Source: Sphaerodactylus townsendi (taxonomy: Eukaryota). Taken from it: a stretch of 64,000 bases of DNA. The notes below the pieces were generated by a model that did no database searches, was not told where the DNA came from, and saw only the letters and a program-made list of their open reading frames with translations. Every line of letters begins with the position of its first letter. The first letter of the stretch is position 1. The DNA is taken from NCBI RefSeq assembly GCF_021028975.2, contig NC_059430.1:108252001-108316000 (forward strand). The letters are read 5' to 3'. Made by a program: the position numbers and the translations under genes. Below, in pieces: positions 7,177 through 63,890 of the stretch.

Positions 7177-7641
7177 AAGGAGCAGCAGTGGTGTAGTGGC
7201 TAAGAGCAGTGGCTAAGAGCAGGTGCACTCTGATCTGGAGGAACCGGGTTTGATTCCCAGCTCTGCCACTTGAGTTGTGGAGGCTTATCTGAGGAATTCA
7301 GATTAGCCTGTGCATTCCAGCACATGCCAGCTGGGTGACCTTGCGCTAGTCCAGGGGTAGGGAACCTGCGGCTCTCCAGATGTTCAGGAACTACAATTCC
7401 CATCAGCCCCTACCAGCATGGCCAATTGGCCATGCTGACAGAGGCTGATGGGAATTGTAGTTCCTGAACATCTGGAGAGCCGCAGGTTCCCTACCCCTGC
7501 GCTAGTCACAGCTTTTCGGAGCACTCTCAGCCCCACCCACCTCACAGGGTGTTTGTTGTGAGGGGGGAAGGGCAAGGAGATTGTAAGCCCCTTTGAGTCT
7601 CCTACAGGAGAGAAAGGGGGGATATAAATCCAAACTCTTCT
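7177..7641 (+). mobile_element. Sauria-type SINE interrupted by a hAT MITE
   Basis: tRNA-like head GCAGTGGTGTAGTGGCTAAGAGC...GGTTTGATTCCC; tail GGATATAAATCCAAACTCTTC. Confidence 0.8.
7352..7499. mobile_element. Palindromic hAT MITE (related copies ~4170-4312, 21112-21240, 31195-31330, 56666-56799)
   Basis: Near-perfect inverted arms; 8-bp TSD CGCTAGTC. Confidence 0.85.
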
Positions 7642-8550
7642 ATTAGTATGGGGGGGGGGGGGTTCCTGAGTTTAAGCTGTAAAATGTTGCGATAAAATCC
7701 AAAGCTCTGCAAAATGACCCACCTCAATTGCAATTACTTGTCTTAAATTTTTTGCAGCTGCACAGAAGAGCTCTGTATGGAGCAGTCTACTAATAAATCT
7801 GATTTCTCACAACACTGCCTGAGTGTTAGAATTGTCCAGGATGAAACATGTCCATCATGCATGGTAGAACCTGAACTCAGGCCTTCAGGTGTGCCCCTCT
7901 CGACCTTCCTCTTGCTTTGCTTTGAGCCATGTTTCTTAATGAGGTCCTCTATATGTGGGGTGTCTTTAGAATGCAGCTCTACATATTATGTAAGGAGAGA
8001 CTAAAATCACCACTGCAGTCCCCACTCCACCACTGACTCTGCTCACCTCTCCATCTGGTCCCCACGAGGATAGAAGCAACCTTTCAAGGGAGGTCTATCT
8101 GGAAGAGCACATTTTCTTTAAAAAATTAAGTAAAAGCTTGCAGTAGTTGATGTGGGGTGGAAAGGCAACAGTATTGTCAGGATGCATCCCTTATAAGAAG
8201 GCTCAGTTTTTTAGGGGTTACACCAAACAGAAGTCCTGTGACACCTTGAAGGTTAACATTCATTCCATCATAAGCTTTTGCAAGTCAGAGCTCTTGTCAA
8301 CAGATGCCAGAATTGGTTATTTGCTGAGCTAGCATTGCTTAGAAGAAATCTTATAACGGTCAAAAACAGATACATTCCATTTGGGGTTTTCTTGTTTCAT
8401 GGGACATTGGCCTCCTTACAGAGCGATGTGTAGCAAGATTAAAGATTCTGTAGATAACTGCAGCTTATCAAACATCCAACATTATTGCTACAGATTTTTT
8501 TTAAAAGCGCTCTAAATAAAAGTGTGCCATCACGTCACAATCGACTCATA

Positions 8551-27853: not shown

Positions 27854-28940
27854 CAGTGGCGTACCTAGGCAAACTGCAGCCCTGGGCAAAACCTGAGTTT
27901 GATGCCCCCCCCCCCCCCCACCCATGGGTTGTCACCCTCCTCCACCGTGACCAAACAATGATTTTTTTCCATTAGGTCGTTTCAAAGTCACCATCACATT
28001 ATAGAACATGCCCCAACGCACAAATCTGAACACAGCAATGGACCATGCCCACAGCAGAAATATTTTTTGAAAACATTTTCAAAATGCTTTCAAAATGTTT
28101 CATTACTGCTATGAAAACATGTTATGGTGTTGTATCCAGTCCCCCCAATTGGGGGAAACAGCATCACTTTCAATGTTATTTAACCTGGGGACCCCAGATT
28201 CTCCCTTTAAGGTGGATTTAAAAGGAGAATCTGGGCTCCCTCGTTTAAACAAGTGATGCTGTAATCCACCCCCAAACAGCATAATTTTCAATGGTGTTTA
28301 AACTAGGGAGCCCAGATTCTCCTTTTAAATCCTCAGAGGGAGTTTAAATCCTCAAAGGGAGAATCTAGGGTCCCCAGTTTAAACAACATTGAAAGTGATG
28401 CTATTTTGGGGTGGATTCTCCCCCACCCTGAAACAGCATCACTTTCAATGTTTAAACTGGGGACCTCAGATTCTCCAAAGGGGGGGGGTTAAAGGGAAAT
28501 CTGGGGGGTGCCTGCTGTCAGGGGTGCAATTGTTAAGCTAGCAGCACCAAACTTTCAGGGTATATTTAAGAGACTCTCCTAATGATACCACCCAGGTTTG
28601 GTGAAGTTTGGTTCAGGGGGTCCAAAGTTATGGACCCTCAAAGGTGTAGCCCCATCTCCTATTAGCTCCCATTGGAAACAATGGGGATGGGGGCACCCCC
28701 TTTGGGAGTCCATAACTTTGGACTCCTTGAACCAAACCTCACCAAACCTGGGTGATAGCATCAGGAGAGTCTCCAAAAACATCCCTGAAATTTTGGTGCT
28801 GCTAGCCTAAAAACTGCACCCCTTGCAGGCCAAAAACGGAAAAAACACTAAAAATACAAATGAACCTGTATTTTTGGCGTCCACCACAAGGAGGCAACCT
28901 GTGCAACTGTCCACTTTGCCCAATGGGAGGAATGCCTCTA
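27854..28940. mobile_element. CAGTGGCGTAC-ended DNA element with internal direct/inverted repeats
   Basis: 5' end resembles 31717; repeated AACTGGGGACCCAGATTCTCC units; large palindrome at ~28545-28810. Confidence 0.6.
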
Positions 28941-31645: not shown

Positions 31646-31716
31646 GTAAAAAGAAGGACTTCAGTTACAGTTTCAAATTCTCAGCTGTGCTGGTTTGCTT
31701 TCCATCTGCAGTCCTG

Positions 31717-32848
31717 CAGAGGTGTAGCTAGGAAAAAGGGGTCCCGGGGCAAAACATGGGTTCCACCACCATATGGGCGGCTGCCCTCCCCCACCGGTGA
31801 ACGGGATTTGTTTCCCCACTCCTTCACATGAAGCCTGTTGGGTACCATGAGCTTATCACAGTTCTCTCTGAACTCTCTCAGCCCCACCTGCCTCACAAGG
31901 TGGGTCTGTTGTGGAAGAAATGAGTTTGTAAGCCACCTTGAGTCTCCTTACAGGAGAAAAAAGTGGCAGTGGTGGGGAGGTATAAATCCAAACTCTTCTC
32001 CTTCTCTTCCACCCCATTCTCATGGGCTGCTGAAGGGATCAAATTTTAATTTGGGGGGCGGGGATGTTAATGTTACCAGGAGGCAGAAAGTCTTTAAGTT
32101 GGGTGGTGGTAGGTCTAAGATGGAGGCAGTGTGTGTATGTCAGGGAGGTTGAGTGGCTCTTCCCCTCTCCTTCCCCCCTGGCTCCCTTTGCTGAATGCTG
32201 GGGGAGGGTCCCCTGCCTAAACTGTCAGGCAGGTCTCCAGGGGGTGGGGGTGCTGGTGAACCACCTGAAGGACCCTCTCCTCTCCCACCCACCACCTGGC
32301 AGTGGCTCACCTGGGCTTGAGCAGGATGTTCTTGCTGGCACGGCCAGCAGGTGAGCTCTTGCTCTTTTCCATGGCCATCAGATAACTCATGTCAGCCAGG
32401 ACCGCCTCCAAATCGGCCATCTTGACCCCGCCAGCTGTGGGGGGCCCCAACAGCACCCTGCCTTGCAAGGACCACCCAGACACCCCCCCTAGCCTCATCC
32501 CATCTCAGCACCCGCATCCGACAGAGAGCCTGGCAGCAGGTTGTTAGGGGGGGATGCGGCTAGTCCAGGGGGGCCAGGACCCCCTCGCAGTACTCCCTGG
32601 AGGCGCACCATCTCCCGTTGCCACAGCACCCTCCTCCCCCCAGTCTCAGTGCTCCTCTGCTGGGCAGGACCAGGTGACCACGGGGGGCACCCCAACCTCC
32701 CCAGGGAGCGAGGAGGGGCAGCTGGGGTTGCCTTTGACACGGGGGAAGGAGGAGGGGTGTGGGGGTGATTTTCCACCCCCCATGTGATCAAAAAGGCGGC
32801 CGCCCAGAGACATATGACCCATATGTCTCCGAGGGCCCTACGCCCCTG
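31717..32848. mobile_element. Non-autonomous hAT-type DNA transposon carrying a captured GRK2 exon 1 and a nested SINE
   Basis: Termini CAGAGGTGTAG...CTACGCCCCTG; perfect 8-bp TSD CAGTCCTG (31709-31716, 32849-32856); Sauria-type SINE at ~31800-32005. Confidence 0.85.
32311..32420 (-). pseudogene. GRK2: Captured fragment of GRK2 (ADRBK1) exon 1
   Basis: [36 protein letters not shown] versus GRK2 [38 protein letters not shown]; ends in CCCAG|GTGAG at the native exon-1 boundary; no further GRK exons seen. Confidence 0.88.
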
Positions 32849-33139
32849 CAGTCCTGAGTAATTTTTTAGACTGGTGTTGAGTAAGTCATCCTAAGCAGAA
32901 TTAGTCCCAGGTAAGTCCATGAAGTCAGTAGACTTAGAAAAGCACATCTCTGCTTAGGACGGCACTGTGAGTGTCTCAGTCAGAATAGATTACCATGTTG
33001 TGACCATCCACCCCAGTTGGACGTTATCTTTGTTCTCTAGTAAACCTGAAATATTAAATCCTTAAAGATATGTCCCCTGTCTGAGGAAATTGCTTTAGTT
33101 GTGAAATACTTTGTACCCACAGTCTTTGTTCTTTTTTAG

Positions 33140-33292
<153 letters not shown>

Positions 33293-63476: not shown

Positions 63477-63890
63477 TAATAACATACCGGGCCTAAATGG
63501 GACCCGGGGACATGACTGGCTCCCTGCCCCCTGCTCCCTGCCCCCCCCTCCCCTCCGGCCTGGCTCCTCGCACCCTATTTATGGGATCCAGCAGGGAGGC
63601 CAGGGGAGGGCGTGGCTCAGACGTGGTTTGGACGGACGCCACAGCAGCAGGCCGGTCCTGGGCTCCCCAGCCTCCCTTGGGGGGGCAGGAGACAGCCTAC
63701 CCCCCCAAGGGACAACCAACTCAGCCAGCGAGCAGCGCCCCAGCACGGGGGGAGCCACCAGGCGCCAGTCGGGTTGTCGTGCCACAGGAGAGGCTGGGTC
63801 CCTGTGCCCAGCACCCCCGCCCCCACATGACAAAACGGCATGCACCCGGGACATGGGATACCCCATATCTCCATGGGCGGTACACTCCTG
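63477..63890. mobile_element. hAT-type element with GC-rich cargo, inserted in a SINE
   Basis: 3' end similar to 32805-32848; TSD CAGCTCAC/AAGCTCAC (7/8). Confidence 0.6.

What the first reader, a model, noticed from the sequence alone, without database searches (positions are those of the whole stretch)
31717..32848. DNA transposon that has captured GRK2 exon 1, its splice donor and GC-rich 5' flank (Pack-TE-like transduplication in a reptile)
Seen: a TIR-bounded element with a perfect 8-bp TSD (CAGTCCTG) in NUDC intron 6. It contains, antisense, [36 protein letters not shown] (110 nt), preceded by CAAG-ATG-G and ending in AG|GTGAG, with GC-rich DNA on both sides. Known: this is the GRK2/3 N-terminal helix, and 'ILL' favours GRK2; as I recall, the native exon 1 ends at this position. 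Inference: retention of the donor and intron start indicates capture at the DNA level, not retroposition. The V>M change (GAC GTG>GAC ATG) and CpG depletion fit methylation decay after capture. Gene-fragment capture is well known for plant Pack-MULEs and Helitrons but rarely described for vertebrate hATs. A mobile promoter-ATG-donor cassette could seed chimeric or antisense transcripts.
Basis: partly seen in the sequence, partly recalled or inferred. Interest (0 to 1): 0.88.

Follow-up and report, generated by a model that had tools for sequence, protein, structure and literature searches.

The report
Old gecko transposon carrying GRK exon 1
A small cut-and-paste (hAT-type) transposon in an intron of the NUDC gene carries a dead DNA copy of the start of a GRK2/3-type kinase gene (upstream DNA, first exon, splice donor). 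This kind of gene-piece capture is already known in animals and was seen several times in this same genome.

Summary
Window 31717-32848 is a 1132-bp element with CAG-type 11-nt inverted ends (9/11 matching) and a perfect 8-bp target duplication, CAGTCCTG. On the minus strand it holds a 36-codon copy of the GRK2/3 N-terminus that stops at the native exon 1 donor (AG|GTGAG).

Public read contigs show that the two ends belong to a multi-copy family. Its usual short form joins 31795 directly to 32741, so the 945 bp between are filler: a 5'-truncated SINE plus about 730 bp of a GRK gene's 5' end. There is no GRK exon 2 in the window, so this is neither a gene nor a retrocopy.

The copy carries six changes never seen in 187 natural GRK2/3 N-termini, so it is decaying. 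The cargo is low copy. Both junctions also occur in relatives about 7-8% diverged, so the insertion is old and no empty site was found.

Not settled:
- GRK2 versus GRK3.
- Whether the cargo arrived with the element or was filled in on the spot.
- Any transcription.
- The parental locus, which could not be examined.

Gene-fragment capture by animal hAT elements is published, and this scan has already noted similar hAT cargoes elsewhere in this genome.

The parts
31709..31716 (.). Left copy of the 8-bp target-site duplication, CAGTCCTG
   Evidence: (family D16).
31717..31795 (+). Left end of a non-autonomous hAT-type element (TIR 31717-31727, CAGAGGTGTAG)
   Evidence: Summed contig depth is 18,000-45,000 here against 33-57 in the flank in run X1. 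Contigs join 31795 to 32741 in all four organisms. 55 of 79 positions are shared with another hAT-like end at 27854.
31796..32014 (+). 5'-truncated fragment of a tRNA-type SINE; part of the filler
   Evidence: 72-84% identical to SINE copies at 2729, 7495, 24085, 44948 and 61600(-) in the window. Depth in reads reaches 1.4e7.
32015..32310 (-). Intron-like DNA directly downstream of the donor; presumed start of GRK intron 1
   Evidence: It is contiguous with the exon copy and starts GTGAGC. No GRK exon 2 is in it or anywhere in the window. Organism A holds a second copy, 88% identical, of 32143-32256 (record 7). Homology to a parental intron was not tested.
32311..32420 (-). Decayed copy of GRK2/3-type exon 1 (ATG at 32420-32418; 36 codons plus AG)
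32421..32740 (-). GC-rich DNA upstream of the ATG; presumed 5'UTR and upstream flank of the source gene
   Evidence: GC is 0.67 and CpG o/e 0.24. The GTCAAGATG context resembles GCCAAGATG of natural loci. In organism A it is covered by one contig identical to the window, with no other copy at 85% or more. Its origin from a GRK promoter is inferred from contiguity only.
32741..32848 (-). Right end of the hAT-type element (TIR 32838-32848, reverse complement CAGGGGCGTAG)
   Evidence: Positions 32741-32796 are very high copy (depth up to 340,000). The outer 50 nt are low copy (416 against a flank of 33 in X1). It resembles another end at 63887(-) in the window.
32849..32856 (.). Right copy of the target-site duplication, CAGTCCTG

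Best explanation
A roughly 190-bp non-autonomous hAT-type element (79-bp left end plus 108-bp right end) holds 945 bp of foreign filler DNA between its ends. The filler is a 5'-truncated SINE piece plus about 730 bp copied at the DNA level from the 5' end of a GRK2/3-type kinase gene: about 320 bp upstream, exon 1, the donor and about 300 bp of intron 1.

The likely mechanism is inferred from published models. After a break or excision in the element, gap repair or a stalled replication fork switched template to ectopic DNA and copied it in. This is the route proposed for Pack-TIRs and for filler DNA in lizard hAT elements.

The composite sits antisense in a NUDC intron. It predates the split from a relative about 7-8% diverged. 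It has lost the GRK sequence constraint and most exon CpGs. It is most likely an inert, fixed relic.

Whether the cargo came in with the transposing element or was filled into a resident element at this site is open. I lean about 55:45 towards arrival with the element.
For: - TIRs and a perfect 8-bp TSD, unique in the window.
- The ends are multi-copy, and contigs join 31795 to 32741 in 6, 3, 3 and 2 contigs of four organisms. This defines the cargo-free form and the exact cargo borders.
- The peptide is a GRK2/3 N-terminus.
- Natural GRK2/3 exon-1 calls, 187 examined, run into divergent intron read-through right after the LP[DE]P codons, typically as ...PR. The five natural loci fetched show CCCAG|GTGAG there, and the copy stops at the same place with the same GTGAG.
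- There is no exon 2 in the window, and no Pfam domain or long ORF.
- Six residues or gaps were never seen in 187 natural sequences.
- Four to six of the 26-32 differences from three natural loci (exon plus short flanks) are native CpG to TpG or CpA changes.
- The right junction is identical in organism C. Both junctions are present in organism D, at about 7-8% divergence in pure flank (records 24, 25, 31, 32).
- Published precedent.
Against: - The parental GRK locus of this genome could not be examined. Homology of the upstream and intron parts to a GRK gene therefore rests on contiguity alone.
- Natural loci from distant species share only the exon.
- The outer 50 nt of the right end are low copy, unlike the left end, so the element may be a chimera of two related families.
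- Contigs that join 32005 to 32741 suggest a SINE-only intermediate or a deletion derivative, so the order of acquisitions is unclear.
- The hAT assignment rests on TSD length and TIR motif. No transposase partner was linked.
Confidence: 0.8

Rival explanations
1. In-situ filling: a short cargo-free element was already resident in this NUDC intron, and the 945 bp were copied into it there by transposition-independent gap repair. On this reading the composite never moved as a unit.
For: - Tan et al. 2021 infer this route for most single-copy animal Pack-TIRs.
- The cargo is low copy. In organism A a single identical contig covers 32397-32696.
- The TSD would look the same under this model.
- In organism D both junctions are seen, but 32397-32596 has no depth.
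Against: - In organisms A and B, and weakly in C (about 2-fold), the outer right terminus (32797-32846) and the cargo show a similar small excess over flank depth, and organism B holds at least three diverged versions of 32027-32268. This fits a few transposed copies.
- Missing GC-rich contigs in D may be a coverage or divergence effect.
Confidence: 0.4
2. A live alternative first exon or promoter: the cassette is transcribed antisense to NUDC and spliced from 32311 into downstream acceptors, giving a functional chimeric or regulatory RNA.
For: Start context (A at -3, G at +4) and the donor CAG|GTGAGC are intact. The copy has been retained in several related species.
Against: - Six changes at otherwise invariant residues and a lost codon.
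- CpG o/e is 0.24 upstream, the same as bulk DNA, which is 0.19-0.22.
- No RNA run holds the stretch.
- Retention in an intron is expected for neutral DNA.
Confidence: 0.05
3. A processed retrocopy or an assembly chimera, rather than a transposon-borne genomic fragment.
For: None specific. Only exon 1 is present, which a severely truncated retrocopy could mimic.
Against: - The donor and non-exon sequence follow the exon. There is no exon 2 and no poly(A).
- Independent contigs of four organisms reproduce the junctions and the interior, including a 616-nt contig with no mismatch.
Confidence: 0.02

Closest known systems
Pack-TIR elements of animals, in particular Pack-hAT (Tan et al. 2021, Nat Commun, PMC8277862), e.g. 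frog hAT-N8_XT carrying a CAPSL 5'UTR piece
   Same: A non-autonomous TIR element with a TSD encloses a DNA-level duplicate of a host gene fragment. The cargo is from a gene's 5' end and is GC-rich. Copy number is low. Template switching or gap filling is the proposed origin.
   Different: The published catalogue required an identified parental copy and young age. Here the parent locus was not examined and the insertion is old. According to a text search of that paper, lizards and reptiles are not discussed in its main text.
Anolis carolinensis hobo-type hAT families with incorporated genomic filler DNA (Novick et al. 2010, Genome Biol Evol, PMC3014272)
   Same: Lizard hAT elements with conserved ends and interiors replaced by extraneous genomic DNA, which often contains SINE or other TE fragments. 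The SINE piece here is the same kind of thing.
   Different: A text search of that paper found the words 'exon' and 'host gene' nowhere in its main text. Here the filler includes a recognisable first exon with its donor.
Plant Pack-MULEs, and Helitron gene capture in bats (PMC4224331)
   Same: Transposon-mediated duplication of gene fragments at the DNA level.
   Different: Different superfamilies and mechanisms, and far higher copy numbers. No evidence here for expression or amplification.

Membership tests
hAT superfamily, non-autonomous element | 8-bp target-site duplication | tested here: met
   CAGTCCTG on both sides, 8/8.
hAT superfamily, non-autonomous element | Short terminal inverted repeats of the CAG / YARNG type | tested here: met
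   CAGAGGTGTAG against CAGGGGCGTAG, 9/11 matching, both differences transitions.
hAT superfamily, non-autonomous element | The ends recur elsewhere in the genome as a repeat family | tested here: met
   Depth at the ends is 100 to several thousand times the flank. The 31795-to-32741 joint occurs in four organisms. Related ends stand at 27854 and 63887.
hAT superfamily, non-autonomous element | An autonomous partner encoding a hAT transposase with matching TIRs | not tested
   None is in the window. Earlier scan notes mention hAT transposases in this genome, but their ends were not compared.
hAT superfamily, non-autonomous element | Weak target consensus nTnnnnAn | tested here: not met
   The TSD CAGTCCTG has A at position 2 and T at position 7 on either strand. 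This is a weak statistical preference, not decisive.
Pack-TIR (transduplicating TIR element) | No transposase; the interior is made of host-derived DNA | tested here: met
   No ORF is longer than 98 aa and none has a Pfam hit. The interior is a SINE fragment plus a GRK exon-1 region.
Pack-TIR (transduplicating TIR element) | A parental copy of the captured segment identified elsewhere in the same genome | not testable with these tools
   The rest of the genome is not searchable here. Contigs show an 88% paralog of part of the intron piece and extra exon-1 contigs in organism A, but their loci are unknown.
Pack-TIR (transduplicating TIR element) | Mobilised with cargo: further copies with the same ends and cargo but other TSDs | tested here: inconclusive
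   Cargo depth is about 1-4 times single copy, and several diverged versions exist in organism B. No flanks of other copies could be read.
Processed retrocopy | Spliced exons joined; poly(A) tail | tested here: not met
   The exon is followed by its donor and non-coding DNA. There is no exon 2 and no A-tail.
Functional GRK2/3 gene | Downstream exons (RGS-homology and kinase domains) and conserved N-terminal helix residues | tested here: not met
   tblastn finds only residues 1-34 in the 64-kb window. Six positions deviate from 187 of 187 natural sequences.

The most novel reading that the evidence does not exclude
In this gecko lineage, hAT elements preferentially copy promoter, first exon and donor modules from the 5' ends of genes. 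Earlier notes of this scan, not rechecked here, report the same layout for ETNK1 and an APEX2-like gene, a promoter-to-N-terminal-coding piece of ZFC3H1, and a promoter-like piece of unknown source. If so, the elements act as a vertebrate counterpart of Pack-MULEs that scatters portable first exons, some of which could start chimeric or antisense transcripts.
Probability: 0.25. Interest if true: 0.65.

Novelty: new member of a known kind. Interest (0 to 1): 0.35.

Why it matters
On its own this is one more decayed gene fragment inside a DNA transposon, with no sign of function. Its value is as a well-delimited example. The cargo borders are fixed to the base by the cargo-free form of the family, and the captured piece is unmistakably a first exon with its donor. 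Together with the other cases noted in this genome, it suggests that lizard hAT elements often sample the 5' ends of genes. That would be worth a genome-wide count and would bear on how template switching chooses its donor DNA, for example open chromatin near promoters.

Tried and rejected
- The exact 63-aa ORF of the copy (32310-32498, minus strand) is not on record in the contig collection.
- A homology search with that ORF found only natural exon-1 read-through ORFs. None shares the upstream part.
- I fetched eight contigs that carry natural GRK2/3 exon 1 (L001-L008, among them Phrynosoma L007) to look for flank homology. Only the exon aligns, at 77-84%. Upstream and intron scores are at shuffle level except for one weak case. 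They are too distant to serve as the parent locus.
- I tried to settle GRK2 versus GRK3 by PDB scores (45.1 against 43.9 bits), by exon DNA distance (17/110 to the KKIALPEP type, 24/110 to the Phrynosoma KKIVLPEP type) and by exon-2 residues recalled from memory. None is decisive.
- Full-length GRK proteins could not be reached. The length window of the search for homologous proteins excludes them for a 36-63 aa query, and the 150 best representatives are all short fragments.
- Two representatives that look mammalian were not followed to their contigs.
- Earlier-findings look-ups by GRK words and by sequence were blank.
- Rfam gave nothing above the gathering score.
- No RNA run was offered, so expression was not tested.
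The zero depth at 32997-33139 in organisms A and B may be the tool's silent filter, and I draw no conclusion from it.

Full report
**1. The observation**

- An element of 1132 bp (31717-32848) begins CAGAGGTGTAG. Read from the other strand, it ends CAGGGGCGTAG, 9 of 11 matching.
- It is flanked by CAGTCCTG on both sides.
- I scanned the whole 64-kb window for hAT-like end motifs in inverted pairs 100-8000 bp apart, with flanking 8-mers differing by at most one base. Only this pair came up.
- The host intron runs from the NUDC exon ending ...HLEK at 31646 to the exon beginning INKMEWW at 33140. Without the insert it would be about 350 bp.
- Minus strand 32420-32311 reads [36 protein letters not shown]. 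The context is GTCAAGATGG, and it is followed by CAG|GTGAGC.

**2. Is the peptide a GRK N-terminus, and does it end at the native exon border?**

- Against all PDB chains, the only hits are GRK2 (E 1.5e-11, 30/34 identical) and GRK3 (E 3.7e-11).
- A search of 1.84 billion representatives returned 281 hits. The listed ones are nearly all short ORF calls of exon 1 that read through into intron 1.
- In these calls the conserved sequence stops after LP[DE]P, and most then run into unrelated intron sequence, typically as ...PR. The five natural loci fetched have CCCAG|GTGAG at that place. The copy stops at the same place with the same five intron bases.

**3. Neither a gene nor a retrocopy**

- Queries that include exon 2 (SIRSVMQKYL...) match the window only at residues 1-34. 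Motif scans agree.
- The DNA after the donor is non-coding and there is no A-tail.
- No ORF in the element exceeds 98 aa and none has a Pfam domain.

**4. The copy is decaying**

- Six positions differ from all 187 natural N-termini collected: V11M, A26G, K31N, one missing codon, P to L and D/E to K in the LPEP motif.
- All five natural loci have GAC GTx at codons 10-11, which is a CpG. The copy has GAC ATG.
- Four to six of its 26-32 differences from three of these natural loci (exon plus short flanks) are native CpG to TpG or CpA changes. The exon keeps 3 CpGs, against 8-10 in the natural exons.
- For the upstream part, CpG o/e is 0.24 at GC 0.67. Two natural loci (L003, L008) are as CpG-poor upstream. 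Decay there cannot be judged without the parent locus.

**5. What the ends are**

I laid the contigs of four public runs on the intron: X1 (organism A), X6 (B), X7 (C) and X9 (D). The names are coded. Organism A holds 86% of the sampled words and may be the source species.
- Summed depth in X1 is 33-57 in the flanks, 18,000-45,000 over the left end, up to 340,000 over 32747-32796, and up to 1.4e7 over the SINE part.
- Depth over 32047-32696 is only 144-640.
- Contigs that join 31795 directly to 32741 occur in all four organisms (6, 3, 3 and 2 contigs).
- So the family's usual form is about 190 bp, and the 945 bp between these points are filler.
- Related ends stand elsewhere in the window at 27854 and 63887.
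- An 8-bp TSD together with CAG-type TIRs is the hAT signature. No transposase partner was linked.

**6. What the filler is**

- Positions 31796-32014 are a 5'-truncated copy of a tRNA-type SINE that is common in the window.
- The rest, read on the minus strand, is about 320 bp upstream, exon 1 and about 296 bp after the donor.
- The SINE may have lain in the source gene's intron and been cut by the capture breakpoint. Novick et al. describe this for Anolis hAT filler.
- Alternatively the SINE was acquired separately. A few contigs join 32005 to 32741. They could be a SINE-only intermediate or a deletion derivative. This is open.

**7. Copy number and age**

- In organism A, one 616-nt contig identical to the window covers 32149-32763 at depth 143.6. 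Single SINE-copy contigs and the flank contig lie at 49-77.
- The cargo is therefore present in roughly one to three copies. There is also an 88% paralog of 32143-32256 and extra contigs over the exon.
- Organism B holds at least three diverged versions of 32027-32268. One of its exon contigs has GAT put in after 32324. That adds an Ile codon (NIILLKP) and restores the native length.
- Organism C has the right junction with no mismatch (32808-32892). It also holds a second exon copy at 87% identity that reads GAT GTG at codons 10-11. That is the other CpG-decay outcome, or the native state.
- Organism D has contigs across both junctions (31669-31754 and 32763-32927). The right-hand contig overlaps a further flank contig that differs by 14 letters and 3 gaps over 201 nt (about 7-8%).
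- No empty site was seen. The insertion predates these splits, so the perfect TSD does not mean youth.

**8. Mechanism (inferred)**

Template switching during repair of a break or excision gap in the element, or at a stalled fork, copied ectopic DNA between the ends. These are the models of Tan et al. 2021.
- That paper infers that most single-copy animal Pack-TIRs were filled in situ, without transposition.
- The TSD cannot tell the two routes apart.
- The small but similar excess of the outer right end and of the cargo over flank depth in A and B (weaker in C), and the several versions in B, lean towards a few transposed copies. I put this at no better than 55:45.

**9. Comparison and novelty**

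- Tan et al. found 370 Pack-TIRs in 100 animal genomes, 208 of them hAT.
- Novick et al. showed that lizard hAT families incorporate genomic DNA with SINE pieces.
- Earlier notes of this scan, which I did not re-test, describe hAT elements elsewhere in this genome, said to be a dwarf gecko. Two carry upstream DNA, a first exon and a donor (ETNK1 and an APEX2-like gene). One carries the promoter, 5'UTR and N-terminal coding sequence of ZFC3H1. One carries a promoter-like piece with no known donor gene.
- This is a new member of a known kind.
- The recurring capture of 5' gene ends is the one aspect that might repay a genome-wide test.

**10. Limits**

- The rest of the genome, and hence the parent GRK locus, could not be searched.
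- No RNA data were available.
- Contig depth is a rough guide to copy number.
- Organism names are coded.

Noticed in passing
window 7352-7499: A 148-bp element with perfect inverted ends of at least 41 nt (starting CAGGGGTAGGGAACC) and an 8-bp duplication, CGCTAGTC, sits inside a SINE copy (7186-7650). It looks like a young hAT-type miniature element.
   Followed up: partly
window 27854, 16399 and 63887 (minus strand): Further hAT-like ends: CAGTGGCGTACC, CAGTGGCGTAGC and CAGGAGTGTACC. No partner end or matching 8-mer lies within 10 kb for the first two. The ends at 27854 and 63887 resemble the left and right ends of the studied element.
   Followed up: partly
window 32324-32325: A relative (organism B, run X6) has three extra bases here in its copy of the exon, which adds an Ile codon. 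The window's copy has therefore lost one of two ATC repeats, probably by slippage.
   Followed up: partly
window 32325-32425, run X7 (organism C): A 362-nt contig carries a second exon-1 copy, 87% identical, with Val at codon 11 and mostly synonymous differences but Ser12 to Asn. It is either the native GRK exon of that species or another decayed copy. Its flanks are unlike the element (record 23).
   Followed up: no
window 32798-32838: The right end holds a 19-nt hairpin-type inverted repeat with a 3-nt loop, just inside the TIR (pair I9). This outer 50 nt is low copy, unlike the rest of the ends.
   Followed up: no
window 32997-33139: Organisms A and B show zero contig depth next to NUDC exon 7, while C and D show some.
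   Followed up: no
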